A DNA stretch of 64,000 bases from Oopsacas minuta (taxonomy: Eukaryota > Animalia > Porifera), in the NCBI GenBank assembly GCA_024704765.1, contig JAKMXF010000110.1:248001-312000 (forward strand), in the 5' to 3' direction. A program made the translations under genes and the position numbers. Every line of letters starts with the position of its first letter. Position 1 is the first letter of the stretch. Below the pieces are notes generated by a model, which saw nothing but the letters and a program-made list of their open reading frames with translations, was not told where the DNA came from and ran no database searches. Shown in pieces: positions 98-23,479 of the stretch.

Positions 98-1985
98 CTG
101 TATTTTAGTAAGAGCAGCACTAGAAGCTTCTCCAGCACCTGATTGTAGGCCCGTTATAGATGTAAATTGACTCTCCAATTCCTTCATACTATTCTCAGCT
201 TTCTGGTTAGCTGCAGAGCATTGAGTCTTAAGCTCATCTTGTGCATCCTTCAACTCTCTAAATTCACGCATCAGCTGCTCCAGCAGACCTAGAGAAATGA
301 TCTAAGGTTCATATTTTGTGGAAAATTGCAAACATCGCAGCTGGAATATAAGTAATCAATTCCAAATATAATTACAAGGATTTTGCGACAAATATAGTAA
401 TTCAAATCTATAAAGATATGAGAAACCGAATTCTAGATGATAGCTATAATATCTTTGAAGAAATCACAATAGTCTAATAAAGAAATATGTCACTATATAT
501 CAATGTAATGTAATCAGTATTAGACAGTATATATCCGTTATAATATATGGAATATGATACAGATACCGATTTGTATTAGAAACGTGAGTAATTAATGTCT
601 AGCCCTACATTAGTTACATATGTGTATATATACACGTATGTTGTCAATGAAAATAATTAAACAAGTGGAATAACGAAATGTACAACGAGAGTTCAACAGT
701 ATTTCTAACTTTTAATGTTCAAAGCAAGATAGAACACTCCTTGATTGGAGTTGGATCGGCTGCTGTTTGCTGTTATGCATGGGGATTGTTAGTATTAATT
801 GTGTTCTATGGACGTGTTATACAAGATAAATGCAGATGTAATAGAACTAGGACAAGGAGGAGAGAGAGGATAGAGAGGAGTAATGTTGAAAAGGCATCTC
901 TACCACCAAGTTATAATGAAATAATCAAATCTGATGAATTACCGAAATACGAAGAAATTATTATAACTCTTACAATGAGGGAATTAGATAATAAAATACA
1001 AGTTTGAATATTACCTGTATATTCTATATACGTATGTGTAAATATATAAATAATGAATATGTCAATAAATATGTACAGTAAACATTCCAATTATAAGTTA
1101 GAACCAAGTTTGAAATATCGAAACTATCGTTATAACGAGAGTTTACACCAGTTTTTACAATGTTAGAAATTGGAAAAGTCATTATGTTTAAGGTTAATTA
1201 ACGCTAAATTAAAGTACCTGCGTTTCCTTTGAGTCCACTCTCAATTCCTCCTATCTTACTCTGTAGAGCTAGATAGTCCATTAGATCTTGTACAGGGGTG
1301 GAACCTTCTCTTGCTCGCTCCAATATGTCATCTAGGGATCTGAATGTTTCTAGTTTACTCTCCATTTCTTGTAATTTGAAATCCAGCTCATCAGCACTCT
1401 TCATTACACCGACAACAGACCGACTATATGTAGCATACAATTATATAATTGTTTCTATACGGATTATGAAAATATCTCTCTAAGAAGTGGAAAATATACA
1501 AAAAATTTCAAATCATCCTTTTGTCGAATATACATTTAAGTTCTACCGAGTTCTACTGTACATTCTATAAGTAAAATTTCACTCATTTTCCGAAATTATC
1601 CGAACTATTCCCCTATATAAATCAATATCTACCTATGTGGCGTAGGTGTAGACCGTGTAACCACTACCTTATCCTCCTCACCCTCTACTACTTCTGAAGT
1701 TACAGCCTTCTCTTTCTTCCGTGTAGTCACTACTTTATCCTTCTCACCCTCTAATATTTCTGGAGTTACAGCCTTCTCTTTCTTCCGTGTAGTCACTACT
1801 TTATCCTTCTCACCCTCTACTACTTCTAGAGTTACAGGCTCCTCTTCCTTAACTTCTAGCTTATTCACGATCTCGTGTAGTATAGTATGGAGATGTTTGA
1901 AGTTTACTTCTCCACTGATAGGCTCCCCTAAACTCATATTGATTAGGAGGTGCATATCTTCAAAAGTCACAGTAGAAGCAGGCAT
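98..1985 (-). CDS. QRICH2/C16orf96 (DUF4795-family)-like coiled-coil protein, 5' part; gene continues beyond the left edge
   Basis: N-terminus MPASTVTFEDMHLLINMSLGEPISGEVNFKHLHTILHEIVNKL resembles the QRICH2/C16orf96 N-terminal motif (..L.DLAIGTP..GAVNF..LH.L). Phase-compatible GT-AG exons 1985-1633, ~1423-1218 and 288-98 encode coiled-coil segments. Confidence 0.7.
678..1007 (+). CDS. Small single-pass membrane protein with PPSY and LPKY (PY) motifs, nested antisense in intron 289-1217 of the QRICH2-like gene
   Basis: 109-aa ATG-initiated ORF: hydrophobic segment (LIGVGSAAVCCYAWGLLVLIVFY), basic juxtamembrane run (RCNRTRTRRRER), then PPSY and LPKY. Confidence 0.6.
   Translation: MYNESSTVFLTFNVQSKIEHSLIGVGSAAVCCYAWGLLVLIVFYGRVIQDKCRCNRTRTRRRERIERSNVEKASLPPSYNEIIKSDELPKYEEIIITLTMRELDNKIQV
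1660..1838 (-). repeat. 66-bp coding tandem repeat (~2.7 copies; 22-aa unit VT.E..EGEKDKVVTTRKKEKA)
   Basis: Near-identical 66-nt units visible in the sequence and in the ORF 1629-1985 translation. Confidence 0.9.
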
Positions 1986-2606
1986 TCTAATTCAAACTTT
2001 ATGATATCTAATGATACAGATAAAATATATTGTGAAAGTTATGAATGAAATACCATATGGTGTAAAAAAACAAGTAAAACGAGATGGAAGTTTGTGTATA
2101 TAGAATCACTGACAAATATTGGGTAATTCAGTAGAGAATAATTTGTCGAAAGAAGGCCCTATTCATAGCTTATACTCTATTGTAATTAGTAAATTCAAAT
2201 ACACTCAAAGTATATAGGAAAAGGCCGAATTGGAACAATATCTTAAAATGGTTTTAAATTACTAGTATACCTGCATAAATGGGTGCCAGGAGGCCAAAAA
2301 TGCTAACCCGTTCCCACTTCTGCCAAATAATGGTGCAGTTCATTTATATGGGGCTAGGAATTCGCTATATTTATTTCACTCCGTTTCCAGAAGTTCCCCG
2401 TATGGAGAGTTTTCACTGTAAACTTAATGAAAATATCGGTTGAGAGAGAAATTGTAGTTGGTGGGAATTTTACGCAAAAACGAACTATGAAGGAGGGACA
2501 ACATTAAAGGAAACATACTGAAGATGTGATATTTATAAAAGATAAAGTAATCTGTAGATAATATATTTATTAAATAAATAATATATAATATGTGTACTTG
2601 TGTTCT

Positions 2607-5600
2607 TTAATCAGATTCAGTATCAGAATCTGAAGTCTCAATAACATCAACTTTTCCTTTCTTCCTCAATACTTGTTTCTTCCATTCTGGCATATTTTCG
2701 AATTTTCGTATTCTAGCTTCAAGTCTAGCTTCTTCTTTAGCCTGCTTCTTTTCATCCTGTTCACGTGAGGCAACTTTCTTCTCGATTAATTTTCGTTTCC
2801 AAAGAGGTACATCTTTCATCTGTTCTTCTTTAAGTCTCTCCCTCTCTTCCTTCTCCCGGATAGCTGCTATTCTCTTGTCCTCTCTGCTCTGAAGGAGCTG
2901 ACGTTTCCAAGGGGGAAGATACTCCACAGGATCTTAAATATGGAATTTTCCAGTAAAAAGAGACGACTGTAACTAGCAATTACTCGTTGATAATTTTATC
3001 ATTATACTGTTGGGGATAATATGTTTTCAGTCAAACGCGTTTTGACCGGAAACAGACTTTGATCCAAGTCCCAACATATCAAAATTTAACCAAGTTGAAT
3101 TAAAGATCCCGATCTGGGACCCATGGACACCTTGGTGGTCCACGGGCGATAAGGGGTGGACAGGATCTCAAAATTTGTATTACATTTTATTGGATCCACA
3201 AAATGTGTCAAAATTCGCTACATTAAGCGCTCTCACCTCCATCTAAATCAGTCTGTGGATTAATACCAGTCTGTACTCTAGCAAATCTAGAAGCATATCT
3301 CTCTTTCTGAGCTTTATATACAGCAGGATCTACTGGTTTCTGTTCTACAGGCTCTGTAGCTAGTCTCCTCTCTGCTAGTTTAGCTCCTAACTCTCCTACT
3401 GCTCTACCCTTCTGAGTCTGTGCTAGTCTGTTCTGTGAAGCTTGTGATACTTTACGTAATCTCTGCTTACTACCTCCTTGTTTTATCTCTGTTAATACGC
3501 TAAGGAAGTCTACTGTATCCTGCTTAGCTCGCTGATCAGGGTGATTTCCGCTCACCTTAGAGATTAAGATATCATCAGGGACGGTGTTTTGACGAATATG
3601 GTCCTCCTATATGCTTATTTGATATTTAACCATGGATGTTGGATTTCGTATATTTTATGTTACATACGTAGAAATCCCCTCTCCAACCAAGTGAGGAGTA
3701 CCTCAAAATGACCTAGAACAACATCCAAGCAGATAACTAAATTTACCATCCATGGTTAAATATCTAATAAGCATATATGGAGATCATTTTCGTCATAATA
3801 ACGGTTTCAAGAGGAAAGGGATTGAACAGTCACCTTTCTAAGATTCAAACCCTTTTTAATCTCAGAGAAAAGAGCCTGTTTCTGGTCGGGATTAGGATCA
3901 AATCTCTTCCTCAATTCATGAGCTGATATCTGTTCAGGAATTTCTATATTTATTTCTATACTATCATCTCCTGATGAGTTATATGTAAGCTCTGCCTCTA
4001 TAAGCTCAGGCGGTATATCAGGAGGGGGAGGAGGGATAAGAGTCCGTAGTTTTGTGAATTCTACAAATGGGTAAATATAAGAAAAGAAATACAGTACTGT
4101 GTTACTATACCTCCGCAAACGAGGTGCCAAAAAGCCGAAAATGCTACCCTCTTTCCCTGATTCTGCCCAATTCCCCGTATGTGTGGAGTTGCATTTGTAT
4201 GGGATTAGGAATTCGCTCAATACGTGCATATTTGACTCCGAAGTTCCCTGTTTGTGGAGGTTACACTGTACCCAAAGGTATTATTATATCAGAAAATAAA
4301 CATTTCCCAAATTTGGCCATACGGTTAAATCAATACCAACTCTGAATAAGCATTCATTAAATGTTACTTACTGCTTTTTATAGGCTTTGATTGCTTCTTG
4401 TCTACAGAAGTGACTGGGTTACTATCTTTGGTATTAACAATGACGTCATCAACATGAGTCATAGGTAAGTCAATACCAAGATTAAGAGCTTGTAGCTCTT
4501 TAAGAGCTATGTCTAGCTCCAGCTGTTGATCTAGTAGTGCTTTCTCTGTGTCCGCCAGAGCTCTGGATTGAGTTACAGGTATCTAGAATAATAGATTAAT
4601 TAGATAAATAATGACGTAATAAATATCTGTGGCTACAAGGTGATCAGAAGTTGGGTCATGTGACAGGTTGAGAAACTCGAAATAATCCATTGGGAGTTAA
4701 TACTATCAACACAAGTATATTGACCTGAGGCTGAGTAAGAGGAGGTTCTTCTACAACAAGATCAGCTAATATATCATCTTGTTGGACAGGTGGAGGTATA
4801 AATACAGGTTTGTCCTCTACAGGATCATCTAACTGTCTACGTCTAGGTCTTCTAACTACAGGAGGCATATTATCATCCTCTCCATCTTCCCAGATCTTCT
4901 TAGGGGGTGGAGGGGGAGGCTTGATTACGTCAGAAGTACGGTGCTCTTCAGGTAGGTCTAGTCTGTTGATTAGCTTCTTAATGCGACGTGCTACTGGCTT
5001 GTCTGGTTCTACTGGGTATGTGAATTCTGGGGGAGGAGAGGAAGCGATATGTTCTATAGCAGGTTCATCTAAATCTGATCCTAATTGGTAAATACACAAT
5101 AAAATGATCATGGTGTATGTAGGATACTATCAATGTAAGGTTGATTATTCGAACAAGTACTGTAGTATAGTCAACTCCGGTTATATCGAAGGAAATGTAC
5201 CGCAATAATCACTTCTATATAATCGACGGAATATTTATCTGTGTTCAATAAAACGGGAGTTGGCTGTAATAATTATCTCTAAAACTATACCTGAAGATAT
5301 ATCTTTGACTATTGGATTCATGACATTCTTAATTTTAGCATTATTAACTTGAACTAAAGATTGTAAACGCTTTGGAACTTGAGTGCCAGTTTCTCCTGAA
5401 TCTTCTAATTCATGAATCTAAAATGAATGTAATAAGAAGATTAATATAGCGAAACGGGGAACTTCTAGAAATGGGTGAAAAATGAATAAAGCAAATTACT
5501 AGTCCCATACAAATGAACCTCCACTAACGGGAATTTGGCAGAACGAAGTAAAAGGACCGCAAGGTAACATATTTTAGTGTTGACTTACTTCAAACTTTCG

Positions 5601-7545: not shown

Positions 7546-8332
7546 TACTTGTGGGTAGATAACTTACAAGAATAATTTCAACTAGTAAGACAATTGTTAT
7601 ATCAAGTGATTAGAAATATTTCCGTTTTCTACACACAGGATGCGGCCAAAGACCCATTGACGGAACTATTTTGGCCATGGCCTACCTGTCACGGAAATTT
7701 CGTCCCTGTATATGAGAAATATTCCATGGAATTTTTTATCCTAGATACCACTTCAAAATACCCAAAACTATAAGGAGGAGGTGAAACTTCTGGGTAACAT
7801 CCAGAAGCAATCCTAGTAGAACTGAAACTAACCACAAGACACCTGCACTTGCAACAAAGTTGCATCATGTATGGTGTGCTTAACTTTACAGGAATTAGCT
7901 AGCCTACATCTACAACACCGGCGATTTCTATTGGACACCAAGTTTTAACCCCCTGGAATTTTCAACTTCTGGGGGTCCTATCAAATGTCTCCACAGCTAT
8001 TTCCATTCAGTATTCCCTAAACCCCTTGTATACCAATTTTCATACACATTTTTGTCACATACCCGACCCACAATTAGAAACTATTTATGTTATACGTACC
8101 TGAAAATGATAATTTCTGTTTACAAGCTTTTGAAACACAACATTAATGTTCGTGAGTTTAGCGTCTAATACACAATTTCAGTCCCCAGACAAATTAAGAG
8201 ATTGATGACATTGACACAAAATATCTCAATACGTAATGAATAAATCCTTGTAAATATGTTATTACTACTGCATTTTGCAACTTAGATTTGAACTATATTA
8301 GTATCCTTCTTGCTTGATTTATCATTTTGACA

Positions 8333-8638
8333 ATGAGTCTCCCACTATTTTCCCTGTGTATCTCTCTACTAGTAATTTCTACGTTTGGCTTAGAGTATAC
8401 ACAGTATCAATATAGAAGGTCTAAAAACAAAGAGAGTATTTTTAGAAATAAAGTAAATAAATGTTCTTCGGAATGTTACCTGTTTGAATCTATTCATGAG
8501 AGACAATCTTGTGAATATGAATGTGTATCAACAAATTGCTACAACTCTGTGTATGCAAAGGATCCGTTGGAAGAAGGAGAAGTAGACATTAGGCTACCAC
8601 ATTTCAAAGGTTGTGTTATTGAAGAGCACAGGGGGTAG
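8333..8638 (+). CDS. DUF4787-family small Cys-rich protein with N-terminal signal/TM segment
   Basis: Hydrophobic N-terminus, then C..EC..C..ECVS.NCY..VYAKDPLEEGEVDIR...FKGC, the DUF4787 signature as I recall it. ATG at 8333 (the ORF track starts at TTG 8327). Confidence 0.75.
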   Translation: MSLPLFSLCISLLVISTFGLEYTQYQYRRSKNKESIFRNKVNKCSSECYLFESIHERQSCEYECVSTNCYNSVYAKDPLEEGEVDIRLPHFKGCVIEEHRG

Positions 8639-9190: not shown

Positions 9191-9346
9191 ATTATGAACT
9201 AAATTTTGGGCCGAGTGTACGTCTTATCAGAGGTCTACTGTTTCGTTTTGAAACATTTTTCCCATGGGATTATCTGGGGAAACAATACAATCCAATACAG
9301 ATTTATTTCATACAAAAGGATTATTTCATATTTAGCAATATAACTG

Positions 9347-12300
9347 ATGAGTGTAGCTACTAGTAAAGGAGTAGACAAGTCTCCGATGGAGGATATTATT
9401 AATCTACCGTTTGATGCATTCGTAGAACATATACAAATTCATCATGCTCAGGTTCATAAGTTATTTTCATTGGCTCATCTGAAAGTATTACAGTTAGACC
9501 CAAATACACCATATAAGGAAGATAACATACATGAAACGTTTATCCGCTACTACGGAAATTTCTTCTACTTCAAGCATATTCAGTCATACCTGCAGGTACA
9601 TTGCTGTATTTACATAATTTTACTTAATTAACGGTCACCTTACGATAGCGACCCGTTATATAATTATTACGATACCTGTATTATTTCGGGATTCAATTCA
9701 TATCGTGGGAAAACTTCGATAATCCCGGCAAATTCTCATATCTTATTTCTGAATAATTTCTGGAGTATTAGGGGGAATAATTTGAAATAAAGGGATTTGA
9801 CAATGCATCTCCTGGGATTATTATTATTACTACAACCTAATTCTAGTCCCAAACTTGATCGTAATCCGAGATTCTACTGTGCCTGTAAAACAGCAATAAC
9901 TCGTAACTTATTTCAATCTTTTAGACATCAGCACAGAACAAGCTATGCAAACCACCTACTAAGGTATTAGCTGGGATAGACTTCTCCCAGTTCGATAACA
10001 TGGTGTTAGGGTTAAAGAAGGTATGTGCTAAGTTGGAACATATCCTCAAAAGTAAATTGAACAAGACAGAGGAGGAAATGGGAGAGAAAGCTCTACCTAG
10101 GGTTATCAAACTTAATCGTAAATATAATCTAAGTGATAAAGAGTCTCTAGCATTAATATTCACTACATGTATAGCTGTATGTCAAGAAGGAACTCCTAAC
10201 AAGTTAGTTCATAATATTTTGTAATTTACTTTAACCTCGAATAGTCGCCCCCTTGATAAAAACGACTTTCTCGCTGATGAGTCATAGTGTGTATTTTGTT
10301 ATATATTATTACTAACCGCTATGGTTTCTATAAGAGGTAATTCTGATACCCGAGTTTCCATTCATAACGTATCCTAAATATCAGGATATAAGACACGCGA
10401 TAAATATGTAATAATAAACTACAGTTAACTCCTGTTATATCGAATGGGAATCAAAACCGTCAAAGTAATACGAACACTGTTAATACGAAGTTCCGGATAA
10501 GGCGAACAGTATTTAACCTTCCATTGGTGTTCTTTCGTATTAACGAGGTTCCACTGTTTCATCAGTTATATCGAATGGGAAATTGGTTCGTCTCACTAAA
10601 TCAGGACACCACCATATACAAGTACCATTGTTCCCAGTTAGTTTATGTGTCACTGTAGACGAACCAGACGTCCCCAAAAACGAGGCATATACTCCCAACC
10701 TGAATCACGTCCTCGTCCCGAAGACGAAATCAAGCTTAAACTCTTCCTATTAAATCGTGGCCTCCCATTTTTGTTTCTACATTTATTTTATCAAACCAAT
10801 AGCTGGGCTATGGGGAGAAATCTATTGGACTACTTGCAGCCTTATCAATCTGCTCTATGCAAAGCTTGTGATATGACTACTACTGATTTCTTGCACTTCT
10901 TGGATCAAGATAGACCCATAATACAGCAAGGAATATTCCCAGAAATACAGACTAACTATACACTGAATTGTACACTTAATATGGATGAAGTTGTTTTAAA
11001 AGGTGAGTGTATTGTTATGACTTATGACGAAAATGGTCAACTATATGCTTATTATTTATTTAACCATGGATGGTGAATTTAGTTTACTGCTTGGATGTTG
11101 TTCTAGGTCATTTTGAGGCACTCCTCACTTGGTTGGGGAGGGGATTTTACGTATATAACATAAATAAACTAATCTACCATCCATGGTTAATATCTAATAA
11201 TAATATATGATACGTACTGAATTTAAATATATAGAATTCTATTACAGGTATTATCGGAGCACATTTGAGAACTTCTGAGTTTATGAAGTTAGAACAGACC
11301 TCTCTGGCAGAAATAATAGCAGTGGAGGAGGGTAACGAACAGTACAGAGATCTGTGTGCTCTCAGTAAGGGACTGGCCCCCTCACTGATGGGAGACAAGG
11401 ATCGTGTTCCTACAATTAGTGATAAAGATCTACCTGAGAAAATGGATATTGTATCAGATAAAGGGAGTCATACGTCAAGTGGTAGCAAATCTGCGGTAAT
11501 TATTTGATATATGAAATAATTTATATGTATAATATAGATACAGTGAAATGGTGAATAAGTTTTTTTGCATTCAATGTTGACTGGAATTGAAAAGTTCTCA
11601 GGGCGGAAATATTTCTATGAGATCGATTTTAGTTATCTCTTTCGTTTCTACCGACGAGAGTTAAATGTTTGTTAATTTGTATACTTCATTACTTCTGAAA
11701 TTAGTTTAATTCCATAAAAGGGCTTCCCTAATAGTCTAGTGGGGCAATTATCAATTACATCCTGTAATATATATTGTTTAACTCCAGACTGATAGAATTC
11801 CATTCTCTGACCTCTCAGAGCTACCTCCAGAACTTCTAGAGCTAGATCCAGATGACAATGACCTAGCTACTCTCCTCCGAAGAGAAAGACTGTTAGAGGA
11901 ACACAAGAAGAAGATGATAGAGAAAGCACGAACAGAAGGAGGAGAGGCTACAGAGGAGGTTAAAGATGCTCCTGAATTGTCAGATGATATTGTCTTGGAT
12001 ACTGGTTAGCTATGGACACTCTATTATAATCGTGTAATTTGTTATTAATTGAAAGAGCATTATGATTAATATACAGTAACTTCCAGAAAATTGTATTAAT
12101 TTTTTTGCACTACATTTCCAGGAGTTTCGCTTTCAACATGTCCCATTTGTGGAGATTAAAATCTGTATTGTAATTAATTTATAACCCTACTGCTAGGACC
12201 TACAAATAACCGTAATTGCTACGTTAGAGGTAAATAGCTATTTATCTATTTTTCACTCTTTAGATAAACTAACACCCTACAAGACAGACCTAGAGTATTT

Positions 12301-15300
12301 AGATGATAATTTCCAGCTGATTAGCTTAATGCTTAAAATTAAAGGTTTAGAAAAGAGAATAGAACAAGAAGCATTGTATGATGAAAACTTTAAGGATGTA
12401 AGAACTCACAGACAGAAGAGAGAATCTGAGTACAAAACTAAGGTATATTCACAGAAAGGAATGTTACCTCTAAATCCTCTATTAGTTGGAAACTTGGTTC
12501 AGCTCTACCGCCTGCATCGAGTTTATAAATTATAGTACCTAGTGATTTATCTTCACAGACCTCCTTACACGAAAATTATAATATTTCGATTTTCGTCGCA
12601 GAGTTCTTTAAATTATTCTATGAAAAGGCCACTTTGTATTATGATTACGTCATAATATAATAAGATAATGATAATGAAATGCAGCCTGCCCGCATATTAA
12701 GCTAGGCCTCGTGTGGAGCTGAGCCAAATTTCTCATTGATATGGCCTCTTTATTTGTACACAAGTACTTCAATGTTATATCGTTACAGGTTTGAGATGGG
12801 ACGAATTCCTATAGCTATTAATATTTCTGTATTCAGGTACAATCAAGAAAATGTGAGAAACGTTTAGAACTAACCAGACAGACTGGATCATGGATTCCCA
12901 GACTTGAGAGATTAGTAATTAGCAGAGGTCTGTGTCCTTTTGAGAAGAACCTTGTACTCACTCTTATAGGAAGTATTATACAGCCTAATAAGATTAACAA
13001 CTGTGGAGATATGAATCCATATGCGACAAGTTCAAGTACAAGTTTCTCAGTTGGAGAATTACTCAGATTGTTTTGTACAAGGTAAGTACAATATTCTATA
13101 CACGTGAGGCCACTTTTGACCTATGTTCCCCATAGCTTAACTGAACAGATAAAACATCGTACTTTCTTCTACAAGAATGCTAAGCTAGTGAGAGAGGGCA
13201 TGATAGTAGTACATGACGTAGGTATTACTGGAGACCCTTCTTCTGCTAAAGTAGAGGTGGATAGAAGAATGCTGGACTTCTCTGTGGGACTAGACACTGA
13301 GTTTTCTGAGGTGAGAAACTTCTAAATATGACAAAATTTTGTATTATTATTTGAGTTGAAATAACTTGTATTTATAGGTTGTTGAAGGATCTCATCTCTA
13401 CTTTCCTAAGACAAAATTTAACAATGTAATATTGAGTGGAGAACAGAAGGAACTAATTCTCAGTACAGTCAGTAACTTTGATACTTATCGGCGGTGTAGG
13501 AAGAAGCTTGGATTAGATGACATCATTACATATGGAGCAGGTCTGGTATTATTGTTTCATGGACCTCCTGGTACTGGTAAAACTATGATGGCTAATGCGT
13601 TAGCTAACAGGCTTGAAAGGAAGGTAAGTTATCCAATGTCTGGATTCGACTTCGAGTTTTCCGGATCCATACTTGAAATTAATCGTGACCAATATATTTC
13701 AATATTTTATCAAGGCACAACCCTTAGGTATTATTGATTAACTTTCCTTCTCTTGGATCTATGTCAGCTGGAGAGAATTTTAAGTTTATCTTCAGAGAAG
13801 CTAAGATAAATGATGCTATATTATTCTTTGATGAGTGTGAAGGGATATTTGAGTCACGTGAGAAAGGAGGTCATAACATTAACTTGTTGCTAACAGAAAT
13901 AGGTACCTTCATAATTGTAATACAGTATTAGTAAACTCCCGTTATATCGAATTCTGACAAATATGGTACCAACCTGTGAAAGAAACATATTCCATCGGTT
14001 ATATTAGGATCTGCGGTATATGTCGAAATAATTCTCGCATTTCCTTGAGCTATTTCTGAAATATCCCCTTTTCTAGAGAGACATGACGGATTAATGATAA
14101 TGGCTACTAACAGACCGTATGATTTGGATGAAGCTATGCATCGTAGAATTACTATTGCTTTGGAATTTCCTAAACCTGATCATATCCTAAGGAAAGAGAT
14201 TTGGGGATCTCATATACCTGCTTCTATGAAGCTAGCTGATGATGTGGATCTTTCGGAATTAGCACTAAGGTAGAGAGATTTATTGAGCGATATATCTTTC
14301 CAAATGTTTCGTTTATCCATGATTCACTTTATCTAGATTTGAGTTAACAGGTGGATTCATAAAAAACTCTATTCTCTCAGCTCTGTCTATTGCAGTATCA
14401 AGAGAGGGAGATACACCTTATGTGTGTCAGGATGATCTATTGAAAGGAGCTAGTCTACAGCTCAGAGGTAGACTTAGGATGAAGGACTTTGATCGCAGAG
14501 TTATTCCTTCAGTCGGACTTGATGAGGTTATATCAATTATTCATATTATTTTATGATTCATTAAGACTTATTTTTGGTCAAACCACCATTTCTATATTCT
14601 TACATTTGAACGCAGCTTGTATATGCAGTGACAAACTGTAACCTCCACAAACGGGGGCCTTTGGAAACGGAGTGAAAACTTCCTAGTGCTATACAAATGA
14701 ACCTCCACAAACTTGAAATATCGCAGAAACGTGGGTAGCACTTTAGGCCTCCAGGCACACCCGTTTGTAGAGGTTGCACTGTATCTGTGTTTTTACGACC
14801 CCTACCACGAGCGATTTCGGAAATGGGGTGTCATAAATACCAGGTTTTACTGGTATACCCATTACTTACAGGTTGTGGTGAATGATAATATTCTGAGCTC
14901 ATTGAAAGAGATAGTACAGTATGAGAAAGCAAGAGCTGTATTATTCGGACAATGGGGATTCGGTAAAACAGCCTCTAGAGGACTAGCAGTGCTAATGCAT
15001 GGTAAACCTGGTACTGGTAAATCACATTCAGCAGAAGCTATTGGATACGAAGTAGGAAAACCTCTAAAAGTTGTAAACTGTGGTGAGCTATTAAGTAAAT
15101 GGGTAGGAGAGAGCAGTAAAAATATTGACTCCTTATTTGAAGAATCCAAGAACATGGACGCTATTCTCTTATTCGATGATTGTGATGGTTTATTTGGCAG
15201 TAGAACATCAATGGGATCATCTACAGACCGATATGCAAATGTTGATGTAGGAGTATTGTTGTATCATATAGAGAGGTTCCCAGGTATTGTAATTATGACT

Positions 15301-15636
15301 ACAAACGTAATTGAGAACCTTGATAAAGCGTTTTACAGACGGTTCCGTTATATGTTACATTTTGAGACACCGAATCAATCTGACAGAGCTAAACTATGGA
15401 AATTATTAATTCCTAAGGAAACGCCTGTTAAAGATAAAATAGACTTCAATGCTCTTAGTGCACATGAAATGACTGGTGGTTCTATTAAGAATTGTATTTT
15501 CAGAGCGGCTGCTAAGGCAGCGTTACGTTCTGTGCCTGAGAGAATGATTACTACAGATGATCTTATCAAAGCTGCAGTAGCTGAGCTTAATAAAGCTAAC
15601 AGGAATTTAGGTGATATCAAGAATATATACTCATGA
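9347..15636 (+). CDS. Tandem (double) AAA+ ATPase with N-terminal helical region; Afp15/Pvc15-like (RYAN-motif) family; 13 exons
   Basis: Phase-consistent exons 9347-9595, 9925-10202, 10659-11002, 11248-11495, 11788-12004, 12264-12442, 12837-13081, 13136-13310, 13378-13623, 13728-13902, 14077-14269, 14337-14526, 14872-15636. D1: GPPGTGKT / FFDECE / LDEAMHRR. D2: GKPGTGKS / SKWVGES / LFDDCD / TDRYANVDV / LDKAFYRR. Confidence 0.88.
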
Positions 15637-15789
15637 TACTTGCAGAATTCTGCTTATCGTATAAGCTGTAGTTTTGTATGTAGATTGCATGTGTAGATAT
15701 TTGTAGTATATTCTTCAAATGAAATTCTTATTTTGCTTTTATCTGTAGTATATCTCAGTAATTCTCTTTTTATTTATAACTGTCAGTTT

Positions 15790-15985
15790 AAGTAGAGTGG
15801 AATTCGTCTATCAAGTCGTATTTTGCAGATTTCTTGCTTATACCCGAACTTTACTACAATTGAGTTCACCTATTAGCAAGTCGTATTTTGCACGAATCGC
15901 CAATACGCGAGGGAATTATTTCAATACAAAATGGACTCTAAGTCTCTGAAAATGCTTGTTATTAGCGAACATAACTGTATTTGAT
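15790..15985. repeat. Dispersed repeat family G; second copy ~34120-34270, partial copy ~44450-44497
   Basis: Shared ATTAGCAAGT.GCATTTTGCACG..AATACGCGA..GGAATTATT..CAATACAAAATGGACT. Confidence 0.65.
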
Positions 15986-19500: not shown

Positions 19501-22500
19501 ACCTAGATACAGAGGCTTAGCCAGGGTGCGGTATATGCGGCAATGCCGCACCCGTGCCACCTCTTTGCCGCACTCTTTTCGCGGCCCTAGCTTCGGGCAT
19601 AATTCTCATGGAAATATATTTTTATAATTGCCGCTAGTTATGTTCGAGGAAATACTGAATTTCAGTTCATACGTATACACTAGAACTCGGATACGTACTA
19701 CTTACAACCCAAAATGTTGTTCCCATCCTCTGAGAACGGTATTCATATATTCCTGTATATTTATGCCGGTTATAAGAACATATATTGCTACTCCCAAGAG
19801 GTTATTTTATAACCAACATCCAATGTAATATTAGTTTCCTGTAGCAGTATGTCTTATCCGAATACTACTGTATTAATTCGCCTTCAATATTTGAGCTTTA
19901 TCCGGTGTTTCTTATAGTAACAGTAATGAATGTGCACGATGGCTACAAACTGAATTCCGTGATATCATAAACATGTTAAATGTAGATGTCCGTACATTCC
20001 ACCTTTGTCAATCTGTTACAGCTGATACAGTTGAAGAGAACTACCTAGCTTGTCAAGGAATTATTACAAATGTACCAGCCCGGATACAAGAGGTTCGTAA
20101 GAAGAAACTTGAAGAATTGAGTGCAAGTCATCACGTCAATGAACAAACAGCTATTAAAAGTTTGGAAGAAACTAATTGGGATGCGCAATCTGCTTCTGAA
20201 AATATAACTTTATTATGCAATCAACATATCCTGGAAGCCTGCAGACCATTTCTATGGTCAGGTGGAATGACGATACAAGATAAACAACCTGATGAAATTG
20301 ATCCTGTCTTATGGGAGCAGTTTATGTTGCTATCTGTTAATATAGAAGATATGAGTGATAAGGTAAGTCATTCGCATATGTAGATTGTTTAATTCTTGAG
20401 GTATTCATCAAATACCAATTAAAATCAAATTTTCCATTAATCTTTTGCTAATGAGATTCGAATTATCAAGGTTTATTAAGTAATAGTATACATACTATAG
20501 TCAACTTCAGTTATATCGAACTTTACCCACTTATTTCGAAGTATTCAATTAAACAAATATGGTCCCAAACCTTCAAAGTAATATACAGTCAGGGGACAAA
20601 AGTATTCGAACACACAAATATATTGTAATAAATTGTATACTCTTTCCCGCTCCTATATATTGTGTAGTCTATATTCGTAGCTGCTATCTAGTAATTTGTA
20701 TAGAATAACATATGTTTTTCAAGAATTTCAAAAAAATATTTTCGATTTACACTTTTTGAAGGTGTTAATTATAATAATTATTAGATAATTATTGATAATC
20801 AAAATATGTGGTAATTCAAAGCCTATTAAGAATCTATAATTTCTGACTTGATATTTGAATTCTACGTAGGCGAGTTACCCCAGATTGAAATTTCCAATCG
20901 GATTGAACAATTTTTACCAGAGTTATAAAAGAATTTCAATTTGTCCCACTTGTGCCACTTTTTGAAAAAGTGGTACAGGTGGCAAGAAAAGCGCCACTAC
21001 AAGGAAATCAACTAGGGTTAGGAGGGATAAGTCGAAGTAATATTTTCGAATGATATGACTATGCTAACCCTTGAATGCCAAAATAACCTCTTGGTAGCGG
21101 CCACTTGTGCCACCTTGGGCAAAAGGTGGCACAAATGGCACAAATTGAACTTCATCTATAACTCTGGTAAAAATTGTTCAATCCGATTGGAAATTTCAAT
21201 CTGGGGTAACTCGCCTACGTAGAATTCAAATATCAAGTCAGAAATTATAGATTCTTAATAGGCTTTGAATTACCACATATTTTGATTATCAATAATTATC
21301 TAATAATTATTATAATTAACACCTTCAAAAAGTGTAAATCGAAAATATTTTTTTGAAATTCTTGAAAAACATATGTTATTCTATACAAATTACTAGATAG
21401 CAGCTACGAATATAGACTACACAATATATAGGAGCGGGAAAGAGTATACAATTTATTACAATATATTTGTGTGTTCGAATACTTTTGTCCCCTGACTGTA
21501 TACACCATTGGTTATATCAAACTTTGCTTGTATCCAAACAATTATCACGATCCCTTAAGCTTCGAAGTAGCGGGAGTTGACTGTATTATTTAAGATAAAT
21601 AATTATTGTATATATAATCTTAATATATATCTTGATTTCTAGGTTGCTAGGAAATTCCTCTGTGAACTTAAAATCCCTTCTCTAATACAACTTAATCTAC
21701 TACTACACCTGGTCGTTGCCGAAGAAACTAAAACAAAAGAGCCAAAAGACTTAGTACAAGCTGTACAAGAAATATCTGAATTTGATGCTGCAGTCAAATT
21801 CTTAAACCAAGAGTGCCCTCTTTGCTTTGAGGAATTTACAGCAAATGAAATGATACAAATGTTTTTCTGCAATCATATGTGCTGTAAGAGCTGTATTACT
21901 GGTCATTATACTGATGTAGTCAGGAATGCTGCTATTAAGAAATGGACATGTTTTCAATGTGAGGAACCTGATATATCACAGATGGATGATCCCGCTGATT
22001 ACTTTGGATTATTGAGTAATGTCGTACAGGCTATGTGTGAGCCAGAAATAGCTGGCCTTTTCCATCACAAAGTTAACGAATTTTACTTTAGCAAGCGTCC
22101 AGAATTCAGGTAGTAAATTCTTAAATAATCCTTGATGGTGTGGGACTATATTTGTACTAGTAATAGACTTCGAGATAAGCGGGTATTTAGAAATCCGTGT
22201 TCTATATAAGGGGAGTTGATGGTACTTTAGAGAAGCCAAAATAATAACACTGATAATTTAGTATATTGCTAATATTAATTATACCAAATACTGTTTTTAG
22301 ATGGTGTCCACATTGTCATAGCGGTTTCCTTGGACAAGAAGGTGAAGGTAAACTACGTTGTCCTCAAGAAGAATGTAACCAGTACATGTGTTACATCTGT
22401 AAGAGGAAATGGGAGCCTGAACATGAGGGAGTTTCATGTGAGGAATATCAGCAGTGGAGAGAAGCTAATGACAGAGATATTCTAGATAAAGGACTTGCTG

Positions 22501-23479
22501 CTAGAATGGTTGAAGAAGGAATAGAATGTCCTTCTTGTAAATTCAAATATGAATTAGCTAGAGGGGGTTGTATGCATTTTAGATGTACTCAGTGTCCAGC
22601 TGAATTCTGCTCTGGATGTTTTAGATTGTTTAAGAAAGATAATTGTACTATGTTTGCAAGTTGTGCTAAGAAAGGTAAATAATGGCAAATACAGGTGGAC
22701 CTAATACAGTGGAACCTCATTAGGACCAACACGGTTGATATGAAATCCCCGATAAAACTAACATATTTTGACAATCTGTTGGTATTCTTATTAATGAGGT
22801 TTCACTGTATTATATTTGGGATACTACATACATTTTAATTACACAATACATAGGTCTTCATGCCCATCACCCTCGTAACTGCCAATACTTCACTCGTGAT
22901 ATGGATATCCTAAAAATGAAAGAACTATTGGAGATGGCAGGATTCCAGAGAGATGAAGCTGTACAGAAAGAACCTGTACCTGTACCTGTACCTGTACCTG
23001 TACCCGAGGGTGCACAAGCTATCCCCGTGAAAAAGAAGCAACAAATATATAAAGTTAAAGTCCCCGATGAACACAAACAGGCCGTTATAGAAGAATTGAA
23101 GAATGAAATGGGAGATGCTTATGCTGAACCTCCACAAGGAGAGCTTAAAATTCCTTGTCAAATTATTGAATACAAAGATAGTCCAGATAAAGGTTATGAG
23201 AAGGAACACTGTAGTAAATCTTCTCTTGAGAAGGATGGTTATGCTGGATTGTGTGAGAAACATTATAAAGAATATCTATGCGGTCTAATGACTAAAGCCG
23301 GTTTGGATCCAATTGATGTTCTTCAAGTGACTGAGGATAGCATTTTCGAATTATTCGCCATTTTGAGAAGAAATGAAATTCCATTTGACGACAAGATGAA
23401 AGGAGATCAACTGAAACTCCTCATTAAAGAAAAATTACCTCTTGAACCGATGACTTTCAAAGGAGCTCTTCAAGTTTAA
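16525..23479 (+). CDS. RNF31: HOIP/RNF31-like RBR E3 ligase (PUB - ZF - NZF - UBA - RING1-IBR-RING2 - LDD), 9 exons
   Basis: Exons 16525-16621, 16961-17094, 17351-17656, 18110-18281, 18478-19399, 19918-20362, 21643-22109, 22301-22674, 22854-23479. PUB-like GTHDVIKKLGYT..FP; NZF WNCSNCTYTN..CEMC; catalytic ARGGCMHF; GLHAHHPRNC..RD of the RING2-LDD junction. Confidence 0.9.
20498..21583. mobile_element. MITE-A copy interrupted by the 913-bp foldback element
   Basis: Left half 20498-20585 and right half 21499-21583 rejoin to match the intact MITE-A at 54529-54676. Confidence 0.8.
20586..21498. mobile_element. 913-bp non-autonomous Tc1/mariner-type foldback element with ~342-bp perfect terminal inverted repeats
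   Basis: 20586-20927 is the reverse complement of 21157-21498 in every stretch I compared. Ends CAGTCAGGGGACAAAAGTATTCGAACAC; TA on both sides; no ORF in the short spacer. Confidence 0.92.
22973..23005 (+). repeat. (CCTGTA)5 coding microsatellite giving PVPVPVPVPVP in the HOIP LDD
   Basis: Direct hexamer repeat, in frame in ORF 22901-23479. Confidence 0.9.

What the first reader, a model, noticed from the sequence alone, without database searches (positions are those of the whole stretch)
9347..15636. Intron-rich animal gene encoding a double AAA+ ATPase of the bacterial contractile-injection-system (Afp15/Pvc15-like) type
Seen: 13 clean spliceosomal exons. D2 carries SKWVGES..LFDDCDGLFGSRT...DRYANVDVGVLLYHIERFPGIVIMTTN...LDKAFYRRFRY. 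Known: the LFG.R....DRYAN.EV..LL..E..G..IL.TN..LD.AF.RR pattern characterises Afp15/Pvc15-like ATPases, which in bacteria are linked to eCIS tail-length control and cargo loading; it is not p97, NSF, PEX1/6 or katanin. Inference: an old, patchily retained or horizontally acquired eukaryotic family with an unknown substrate. The introns argue against bacterial contamination.
Basis: partly seen in the sequence, partly recalled or inferred. Interest (0 to 1): 0.72.

Follow-up and report, generated by a model that had tools for sequence, protein, structure and literature searches.

The report
Animal cousin of injection-system ATPases
This is a real, spliced and expressed animal gene for a large double-ring AAA+ motor protein; it belongs to an unstudied family, found in many eukaryotes and some bacteria, that is the sister group of the ATPases that load bacterial contractile injection systems, and it has no injection system beside it.

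Summary
The + strand at 9347-15636 carries 13 GT-AG exons (3360 nt, 1119 codons). Contigs of one public run that behaves like RNA carry 11 of the 12 splice junctions exactly as modelled. Neighbouring genes are animal-type (HOIP with LDD, IRS-type PTB, syntaxin).

- The protein is not p97, NVL, AFG2, PEX or NSF.
- It shares the PF22977 winged-helix + D1 + D2 layout with true eCIS ATPases, which I verified in Serratia, Enterobacter and Streptomyces eCIS operons.
- A D2 tree puts it in a separate "long-form" clade (split 100/99), not among the eCIS-linked ATPases.
- The closest prokaryotic relatives have no sheath, tube or baseplate genes within 10 kb.

The long forms carry a second, divergent copy of the winged-helix module at the N-terminus (hhalign 98.9%). 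They occur in Planctomycetota and other prokaryotic contexts. They also occur in amoebozoans, heteroloboseans, euglenids, Anaeramoeba, cercozoans, dinoflagellates, a haptophyte, green algae, a conifer, Thecamonas, an opisthokont and, by an Atlas cluster, oomycetes. No named animal was seen among them.

D1 motifs are canonical. D2 has a KWVG pore loop, but its Walker B glutamate is aspartate.

Likely function: a stand-alone hexameric protein unfoldase or loader with an unknown client. Per operator rule, the exons were never joined.

The parts
9347..9595 (+). Exon 1 (ATG at 9347, ends phase 0); start of the N-terminal WHD-like module (WHD')
   Evidence: Sequence reading. Joint 9595|9925 in X4 contigs. 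Aligns to P0167 residues 22-67.
9925..10202 (+). Exon 2; holds the 'LPRxxxL..LS..E' helix motif of WHD'
   Evidence: X4 loose ends at 10202 and 10803 read into each other's exon. hhalign against the family N-terminal profile A2: probability 93.6, E 2e-7.
10803..11002 (+). Exon 3 (WHD')
11248..11495 (+). Exon 4 (end of WHD', start of the disordered linker)
   Evidence: Joint 11495|11788 in X4. Matches P0167 243-295.
11788..12004 (+). Exon 5: acidic, low-complexity linker
   Evidence: The X4 loose end at 12004 continues with the first letters of exon 6. The equivalent stretch of the orthologue model has pLDDT below 50.
12264..13310 (+). Exons 6-8 (12264-12442, 12837-13081, 13136-13310): complete PF22977 winged-helix domain
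   Evidence: Pfam PF22977 hits exon by exon: profile 10-64 (32.3 bits), 77-155 (60.6 bits), 158-216 (52.7 bits), all above the 27-bit cut-off. Joints 12442|12837 and 13081|13136 in X4.
13378..14526 (+). Exons 9-12 (13378-13623, 13728-13902, 14077-14269, 14337-14526): AAA module D1 with its lid
   Evidence: Pfam AAA on exons 9 and 10. 71% and 69% identity to P0167 over exons 9 and 12. Joints 13623|13728, 13902|14077 and 14526|14872, and the loose end at 14269, in X4.
13561..13584 (+). D1 Walker A, GPPGTGKT
   Evidence: Read from the sequence.
13821..13835 (+). D1 Walker B, LFFDE (canonical Asp-Glu)
   Evidence: D1 Asp-Glu is present in 85 of 85 long-form relatives.
14872..15636 (+). Exon 13: whole AAA module D2 with lid, and the stop codon (15634-15636)
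   Evidence: Pfam AAA 1.7e-23. 64% identity to P0167 D2.
15001..15024 (+). D2 Walker A, GKPGTGKS
15097..15108 (+). D2 pore loop 1, KWVG
15166..15180 (+). D2 Walker B, LLFDD: aspartate where the catalytic glutamate normally sits
   Evidence: No variant was reported here in four runs. Among long forms, 57 have E, 6 have D, 1 has Q and 1 has N.
15226..15240 (+). DRYAN motif of D2

Best explanation
The locus is a functional, expressed animal gene for a 1119-codon classical-clade, two-ring AAA+ ATPase. Its layout is WHD' (a divergent copy of the PF22977 module), an acidic disordered linker, WHD (PF22977), D1 and D2. It belongs to a 'long-form' family present in some prokaryotes and in many eukaryotic supergroups. 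That family is the sister group of the short WHD-D1-D2 ATPases, which include the eCIS loading ATPases Afp15/Pvc15. Shown here: the gene model, splicing, domain content, clade membership and the lack of eCIS linkage. Inferred: it forms a hexamer. D1 (invariant Walker A and B, sensor-1 Asn, Arg-Arg) supplies most of the ATP hydrolysis. D2 (aromatic KWVG pore loop, Walker B Asp-Asp) grips and threads the polypeptide with slowed hydrolysis. The two winged-helix modules select a client or adaptor. By analogy with Pvc15, the client would be recognised through a disordered leader and then unfolded, stabilised or handed on. The client is unknown.
For: Gene model and expression.
Animal context: HOIP IBR + LDD, IRS-type PTB, syntaxin, RabGAP, RFX and prefoldin.
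Domains.
Shared architecture with verified eCIS ATPases.
Family hits of 1000 aa with two AAA stretches, colinear from exon 6 to the stop.
Nearest relative: P0167 (D2 64%, D1 exon 9 71%). It is itself intron-bearing, with exon fragments on ENA contigs L087-L089.
Trees: long-form versus short-form split 100/99, eCIS clade 98/92, window + P0167 100/99. All 14 named eukaryotes, the window and 2 prokaryote-context sequences form one clade at 96/89. The AU test does not reject eukaryote monophyly (p = 0.395).
No eCIS markers lie next to the long forms or the Myxococcota short forms, whereas they do lie next to the 27-31%-identity relatives. None are in the window.
Duplicated WHD: hhalign A2 against A3, probability 98.9, E 2.6e-17, 195 columns. 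The AF2 models show similar features (helical hairpin plus short helices): pLDDT 82 and 90.
Motif statistics.
Pvc15 domain roles: PMC11495950.
Against: No biochemical data exist for any long-form member.
Hexamer formation, ring roles and client recognition are inferences from motifs and from Pvc15, which belongs to the other clade and has the opposite active ring.
The effect of Walker B Glu->Asp on D2 hydrolysis is assumed, not measured. The nearest relative, P0167, keeps Asp-Glu.
The organism is coded, so 'animal' rests on neighbouring genes.
The tree uses D2 only (253 columns), and its backbone inside the long-form clade is unresolved.
Run X4 is not on record as RNA; that it is RNA is inferred from its spliced contigs and its exon/intron depth contrast.
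Confidence: 0.72

Rival explanations
1. The gene entered this animal's lineage (or a narrow group of eukaryotes) by a relatively recent transfer from a bacterium with a long-form ATPase and gained its introns afterwards. On this view it is not an ancient eukaryotic gene kept by few lineages.
For: Two sequences from prokaryote-type contigs (P0001, P0173) fall inside the clade that holds all eukaryotes. No named animal was among about 30 labelled relatives. Of the window's 12 introns, only one position (after P0167 residue 625, phase 0) is shared exactly with the 20 introns of the nearest relative's gene; about 0.08 would be expected by chance. There is no synteny between the two loci.
Against: The nearest relative is another intron-bearing eukaryotic gene, joined at 100/99. 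The family is present in at least nine eukaryotic lineages and eukaryote monophyly is not rejected. The gene has host-like GC, 12 introns and normal splicing. D2 identity to the best prokaryote-context sequence is only about 55%.
Confidence: 0.25
2. It is a true Afp15/Pvc15 orthologue that still serves a contractile injection particle encoded elsewhere in the host genome or in a symbiont.
For: It shares the PF22977 + D1 + D2 layout and has 34-38% D2 identity to verified eCIS ATPases.
Against: It lies on the other side of a 100/99 split from the eCIS-linked clade. There are no eCIS markers in the 64-kb window or beside its closest prokaryotic relatives. It has an extra WHD' and the opposite pattern of ring conservation.
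Confidence: 0.04
3. It is a divergent member of a classical eukaryotic type-II AAA family (p97/Cdc48, NVL/Rix7, AFG2/SPATA5, PEX1/6 or NSF).
For: The best solved-structure hits are Cdc48/p97, AFG2 and Rix7. One plant relative is annotated in NCBI as 'cell division control protein 48 isoform X3'.
Against: Those hits score about 60 bits per domain, against 388 bits for the PF22977 family. No Cdc48-type, PEX-type or NSF-type N-domain was found; exons 6-8 hit PF22977 instead. The plant protein itself carries PF22977.
Confidence: 0.02
4. It is a contaminant or a dead gene copy.
For: None was found.
Against: It has twelve spliceosomal introns and animal-type genes on both sides. The reading frame is open over 1119 codons. 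Spliced contigs are present at high depth. All catalytic motifs are conserved except one.
Confidence: 0.01

Closest known systems
eCIS ATPases Afp15 / Pvc15 (Serratia, Photorhabdus; also Streptomyces and Acidobacteriota eCIS loci)
   Same: Both have a PF22977 winged-helix N-domain followed by two classical AAA modules. Both have an aromatic pore loop in D2 (K-W/Y-V/I-G) and the AF.RR arginine pair. D2 identity is 34-38%.
   Different: The window gene lies in a separate clade (100/99). It has an extra N-terminal WHD' and an acidic linker (about 350 more residues). It has no tape-measure, Pvc16, sheath or tube neighbours. Its D1 is canonical and invariant here, whereas Pfam's AAA model does not detect D1 in the two eCIS ATPases scanned, and the Pvc15 paper reports D2 as the sole active ATPase domain (PMC11495950). 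It is a spliced eukaryotic gene.
Stand-alone short WHD-D1-D2 ATPases of Myxococcota and relatives (unnamed; some sit behind SWIM + MoxR-type AAA + DUF2201 VWA/metallopeptidase genes)
   Same: Both have PF22977 + two AAA modules, with both modules canonical. Neither is linked to eCIS genes. Identity to the long-form query (first sequence P0009) is 32-39% over WHD-D1-D2.
   Different: They lack WHD' and are about 700-780 aa. They fall with the eCIS ATPases on the short-form side of the tree.
IetA / IteA anti-phage ATPase (NCBIfam NF042959; PADLOC IetA)
   Same: It is the best curated-family hit of D2: 101 bits in NCBIfam and 112 bits in PADLOC.
   Different: IetA models are 262-395 positions long, the length of a protein with one AAA module; that IetA pairs with a protease is from my own knowledge. 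The NCBIfam score is far below the 510-bit cut-off.
Cdc48/p97, AFG2/SPATA5, NVL/Rix7
   Same: All are two-ring classical AAA+ proteins, and these are the best solved structures by sequence.
   Different: They score only about 60 bits per domain. The N-domain is different. No membership.

Membership tests
eCIS ATPase (Afp15/Pvc15) | PF22977-type winged-helix N-domain followed by tandem AAA modules D1 and D2 | tested here: met
   PF22977 over exons 6-8. AAA on the D1 exons and on exon 13. The same Pfam pair is found in verified eCIS ATPases L002 and L003.
eCIS ATPase (Afp15/Pvc15) | Encoded within or next to an eCIS operon (sheath, tube, baseplate, tape measure, Pvc16) | tested here: not met
   No marker in the window at E <= 0.1. 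None within 10 kb of the long-form or Myxococcota relatives, while the same scan finds them next to L062-L064 and L068-L083. The rest of the genome was not searchable.
eCIS ATPase (Afp15/Pvc15) | Branches inside the clade of eCIS-linked ATPases | tested here: not met
   The long-form/short-form bipartition has support 100/99. The eCIS-linked rows are monophyletic at 98/92 on the other side.
eCIS ATPase (Afp15/Pvc15) | D2 is the sole active ATPase ring and D1 is degenerate (Pvc15, PMC11495950) | tested here: not met
   The window's D1 has GPPGTGKT, FFDE, ATN and HRR. Its D2 Walker B is FDD. This is motif-level only; there is no enzymology.
Long-form tandem-WHD double-AAA family (unnamed; PF22977 + 2x PF00004, about 1000 aa) | N-terminal extension homologous to the family's WHD' region | tested here: met
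   Exon 2 against profile A2: probability 93.6, E 2e-7. Exons 1-5 align in order to P0167 residues 22-346, though the extrapolated ranges of exons 4 and 5 overlap. A2 against A3 (WHD): probability 98.9.
Long-form tandem-WHD double-AAA family (unnamed; PF22977 + 2x PF00004, about 1000 aa) | Groups with long-form proteins in a D2 phylogeny | tested here: met
Cdc48/p97, NVL, AFG2, PEX1/6, NSF | Family-specific N-domain and a curated-model score above the cut-off | tested here: not met
   TIGR01243 CDC48 scores 70.5 bits against a cut-off of 802.65. No such N-domain was found in Pfam on exons 1-8. PDB hits score about 60 bits per domain.
IetA/IteA | NCBIfam NF042959 above its cut-off; single-AAA architecture | tested here: not met
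   101.3 bits against a cut-off of 510. Two AAA modules plus WHDs.

The most novel reading that the evidence does not exclude
The long-form tandem-winged-helix AAA+ family is an ancient, possibly LECA-age, eukaryotic sister of the eCIS cargo-loading ATPase. It would work as a leader-peptide-dependent protein unfoldase or loader in a still unknown eukaryotic system. Candidates are a conflict or immunity module, hinted at by the patchy spread, the SAM and EGF-like fusions in amoebae and the MoxR-VWA-SWIM neighbours of bacterial cousins, or the loading of cargo into some secretory or extrusive structure. This animal would be one of very few metazoans that kept it.
Probability: 0.15. Interest if true: 0.8.

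Novelty: new variant of a known kind. Interest (0 to 1): 0.55.

Why it matters
Afp15/Pvc15 ATPases are being studied and engineered because they decide which proteins get loaded into injectable nanosyringes, yet their winged-helix domain is poorly understood. This work shows they have a large, unstudied sister family. That family has a duplicated winged-helix module, no injection machinery and a different active ring. It is spread over most eukaryotic supergroups and is transcribed and spliced in an animal.

This gives a comparative handle on what the WHD-AAA core does on its own. It adds an uncharacterised member to the short list of eukaryotic type-II AAA+ unfoldases. It also provides a test case for ancient retention versus bacterium-to-eukaryote transfer. 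At least one public record of the family looks mis-named: a conifer protein carrying PF22977 is annotated as 'cell division control protein 48'.

Tried and rejected
They returned few hits, so they say nothing about absence in animals.
- A search with the neighbouring syntaxin to name the organism returned only unnamed ENA/Logan proteins. The phylum stays undetermined.
- The synteny test between the window and the nearest relative's locus was negative.
- Foldseek against the PDB found nothing significant for the N-terminal extension (best E 0.5). VIA wide gave only generic helical-hairpin matches and a few PadR-like ones at Z <= 7.5.
- The WHD model gave consistent but individually non-significant MarR, ArsR, Rep and DnaD winged-helix matches (E 0.3-2).
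- There are no solved structures of the family by sequence.
- No paper mentions PF22977, and no paper links eCIS ATPases to eukaryotic homologues.
- No tRNA was found and no long internal repeat in the gene.
- The first AF2 job failed and was rerun. One Pfam call was over the size limit and was resent smaller.
- Considered and rejected: p97/NVL/AFG2/PEX membership, IetA membership, contamination, pseudogene.
- In the FastTree run, D1 modules used as a paralogue root nested inside the short-form D2 group. I took this as a rooting artefact and dropped them.

Full report
**1. Observation**

I read 9200-15800 directly. This gives 13 + strand exons: 9347-9595, 9925-10202, 10803-11002, 11248-11495, 11788-12004, 12264-12442, 12837-13081, 13136-13310, 13378-13623, 13728-13902, 14077-14269, 14337-14526 and 14872-15636. 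Every intron is GT..AG and the phases close. The coding length is 3360 nt (1119 codons plus stop). The ATG at 9347 is the first in frame after a TAA.

Four public runs of one sample hold the stretch. I laid them on 9347-15346, which is 6000 letters.
- X1 and X3 cover exons and introns evenly; X2 covers only 16 of the 30 bins. All three lack the splice joints and read as DNA.
- Run X4 has exon word depths of about 1000-4900 and intron-only bins of 0-54.
- X4 contigs carry GT..AG joints at 9595|9925, 11495|11788, 12442|12837, 13081|13136, 13623|13728, 13902|14077 and 14526|14872. A low-depth joint lies at 11002|11248-9.
- X4 loose ends at 10202/10803, 12004 and 14269/14335 read straight into the next exon.

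So 11 of 12 junctions are seen in what behaves as RNA, although the run's kind is not on record. Intron 8 (67 nt) is supported by gap-free homology. The quoted motifs are all present in exon 13.

**2. Host**

The window is 30-38% GC throughout. Its other genes are eukaryotic and animal-type:
- an RBR ligase with IBR domains and the HOIP-type C-terminal LDD domain (PF18091);
- an IRS-type PTB protein, a syntaxin/SNARE, a RabGAP-TBC, an RFX DNA-binding domain and a prefoldin subunit.

The organism's name is coded, and a syntaxin search returned only unnamed relatives. I therefore call it an animal on gene content only.

**3. Domains in the window, exon by exon**

- Exons 6, 7 and 8 hit Pfam PF22977 ('Winged helix domain, variant') colinearly. 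The profile positions are 10-64, 77-155 and 158-216, and each hit is above the gathering score.
- Exons 9-12 form AAA module D1. Exon 13 alone encodes AAA module D2.
- D1 has GPPGTGKT, LFFDE, ATN and HRR, but no aromatic pore loop.
- D2 has GKPGTGKS, a KWVG pore loop, DRYAN, TTN and YRR. Its Walker B is LLFDD, with aspartate where the catalytic glutamate normally sits. No read variant was reported there.

**4. Relatives**

An exhaustive phmmer of the D2 exon against 1.84 billion representatives gave 5822 hits below 1e-30. The top hits are proteins of about 1000 aa with two AAA stretches. tblastn of 30 of them back on the window is colinear from exon 6 to the stop, with HSP ends at my exon borders.

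Named members, all with PF22977 + 2x AAA where I checked:
- Cercozoa, Planoprotostelium, Anaeramoeba and Thecamonas;
- an EukProt opisthokont, Willaertia, Chlamydomonas and Astrephomene;
- the dinoflagellates Biecheleria and Durusdinium, the haptophyte Calcidiscus, and the euglenids Ploeotia and Entosiphon;
- the conifer Cryptomeria (annotated as Cdc48) and Acanthamoeba (with SAM domains);
- by an Atlas cluster, oomycetes.

No named animal appeared, but the labelled sample is only about 30 proteins, so absence from other animals is not shown.

Long forms also sit on prokaryote-type contigs:
- a Planctomycetota MAG next to a hybrid histidine kinase;
- contigs with overlapping, intron-free genes.

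**5. Nearest relative**

P0167 (1071 aa) comes from three JGI contigs of 3.4-4.3 kb; the one contig read holds this single gene, so they look like cDNA. Its 90% cluster also contains 61-276-aa fragments on ENA hifiasm contigs of up to 2.1 Mb. On locus L089 those fragments are exons of a 21-exon gene.

Identity to the window is 64% in D2, 71% and 69% over D1 exons 9 and 12, 52% in the WHD and 30-42% in the N-terminus. Of the window's 12 introns, one position (after P0167 residue 625, phase 0) is shared exactly with L089's 20. Another differs by 4 nt, and the rest differ. Flanks show no synteny. P0167 keeps Asp-Glu in D2.

**6. Relation to eCIS ATPases**

tblastn of D2 against plasmids found 585 records at under 60% identity. 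Three of the best sit inside annotated eCIS operons:
- Serratia pELP1.10, between the tape-measure gene and Pvc16;
- an Enterobacter plasmid, likewise;
- a Streptomyces plasmid, after sheath, tube, VgrG, gp25 and baseplate J.

The two I scanned with Pfam (Serratia, Streptomyces) carry PF22977 + AAA. So homology with Afp15/Pvc15-type ATPases is real.

However, a scan of 185,579 prokaryotic species genomes with the family profile, followed by a marker scan of the flanks, showed a clear split. Sheath, tube, gp25 or baseplate genes occur only next to the distant relatives (27-31% identity; Acidobacteriota, Lachnospiraceae, Prevotella). None occur next to long forms or next to the 32-39% identical Myxococcota short forms.

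A subset of the Myxococcota short forms follows SWIM, MoxR-type AAA and DUF2201 (VWA/metallopeptidase) genes. The window itself has no eCIS marker.

**7. Phylogeny of D2 (253 columns, IQ-TREE LG+C20 PMSF)**

- Long forms (55 rows, including the window) are separated from short forms (13 rows) by a 100/99 branch.
- eCIS-linked ATPases are monophyletic (98/92) inside the short forms.
- Window + P0167 is supported at 100/99.
- The backbone inside the long forms is unresolved.
- With labelled rows only, all 14 eukaryotes, the window and two prokaryote-context sequences form one clade (96/89). An AU test does not reject eukaryote monophyly (p = 0.395).

The D2 data therefore fit one old eukaryotic origin with many losses. 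They do not exclude several transfers.

**8. The N-terminal extension**

A profile of the first 270-450 residues of 32 long forms (A2) matches a profile of their PF22977 region (A3). The hhalign probability is 98.9%, E 2.6e-17, over 195 columns, and it lines up PF..D.EY with PY..DLEY and LPR..RL.....LS..E with LPRLERL....L..FEK. The window's exon 2 matches A2 at 93.6%.

AlphaFold2 models of the P0167 N-terminus (pLDDT 82, pTM 0.73) and WHD (pLDDT 90, pTM 0.85) both show a long helical hairpin followed by short helices. The WHD model ends in a beta hairpin. A disordered acidic linker lies between the two modules and corresponds to the window's exon 5.

PDB fold searches gave only weak matches. 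These were MarR, ArsR, Rep, DnaD and PadR winged-helix proteins and generic hairpins. This agrees with the Pvc15 paper's note that its N domain resembles DNA-binding proteins. The long form is thus WHD'-linker-WHD-D1-D2.

**9. Mechanism (inferred)**

Among 85 long forms, D1 Walker B Asp-Glu is invariant and D1 never has an aromatic pore loop by my pattern. D2 has K-W/Y-V-G in 33, and its second Walker B acid is E in 57, D in 6, Q in 1 and N in 1.

The paper on Pvc15 reports the opposite: D2 is the only active ATPase, while N and D1 are needed for loading (PMC11495950). My proposal:
- The protein is a hexameric double ring.
- D1 drives ATP turnover.
- D2 holds and threads the substrate, with slowed hydrolysis in this animal's copy.
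- The two winged-helix modules select a client or adaptor.

The client is unknown.

**10. Comparison and novelty**

The gene is not a member of the eCIS ATPase clade, nor of IetA (101 bits against a 510-bit cut-off), nor of p97, NVL, AFG2 or PEX. It is a member of an unnamed, uncharacterised long-form family. I found no paper that mentions PF22977 or eukaryotic relatives of eCIS ATPases.

**11. Rule compliance**

All searches of the window's protein were made exon by exon, by reference. Full-length work used natural relatives returned by the tools.

Noticed in passing
window 10420-10557, 11087-11177, 14637-14711 (introns 2, 3 and 12): These stretches have raised word depth in the DNA-like runs, many loose ends, and joints between 10557 and 14689 with foreign letters in all four runs. 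This looks like copies of interspersed repeats inside the introns. The repeat finder saw no long repeat within the gene itself.
   Followed up: partly
window 15259: T>C in the RNA-like run X4 only (depth 1784, 31 letters from a contig end). It is synonymous (Leu TTG->CTG), so an allele or an assembly-end effect rather than a coding change.
   Followed up: partly
window 8327-8638 (+): A 103-codon ORF just upstream of the gene. It has a hydrophobic N-terminus and many cysteines, so it may be a small secreted protein. It was not examined.
   Followed up: no
window 22266-23476 (+): ORFs with IBR domains and the HOIP-type RBR C-terminal (LDD) domain PF18091. This confirms a HOIP/RNF31-like gene downstream.
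   Followed up: partly
L021, L024, L034, L037, L040, L043, L044, L049, L050 (Myxococcota-type MAGs): Short WHD-D1-D2 ATPases lie directly downstream of a conserved trio: a SWIM zinc-finger protein, a MoxR-type AAA and a DUF2201 VWA/metallopeptidase. This may be a bacterial conflict or regulatory module built around this ATPase type.
   Followed up: partly
P0057 (Cryptomeria japonica XP_057858145.2): Annotated in NCBI as 'cell division control protein 48 isoform X3', but it carries PF22977 + 2x AAA and belongs to this family. This is a likely mis-annotation.
   Followed up: partly
P0158 (Acanthamoeba), P0170 (Planoprotostelium PROFUN_07405), P0030 (Thecamonas, 2531 aa): These family members have extra parts. 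One has an N-terminal SAM domain and only one AAA hit. One is a 1911-aa protein named EGF-like-domain-containing and lies on the same 129-kb contig as its paralogue, with the adjacent locus tag PROFUN_07406. One has a 1790-aa N-terminal extension.
   Followed up: no
L089 9250-18990: The nearest relative's gene has 21 exons and splits D2 into 6 exons, whereas the window has D2 in one exon. Only one intron position is common to both genes.
   Followed up: yes
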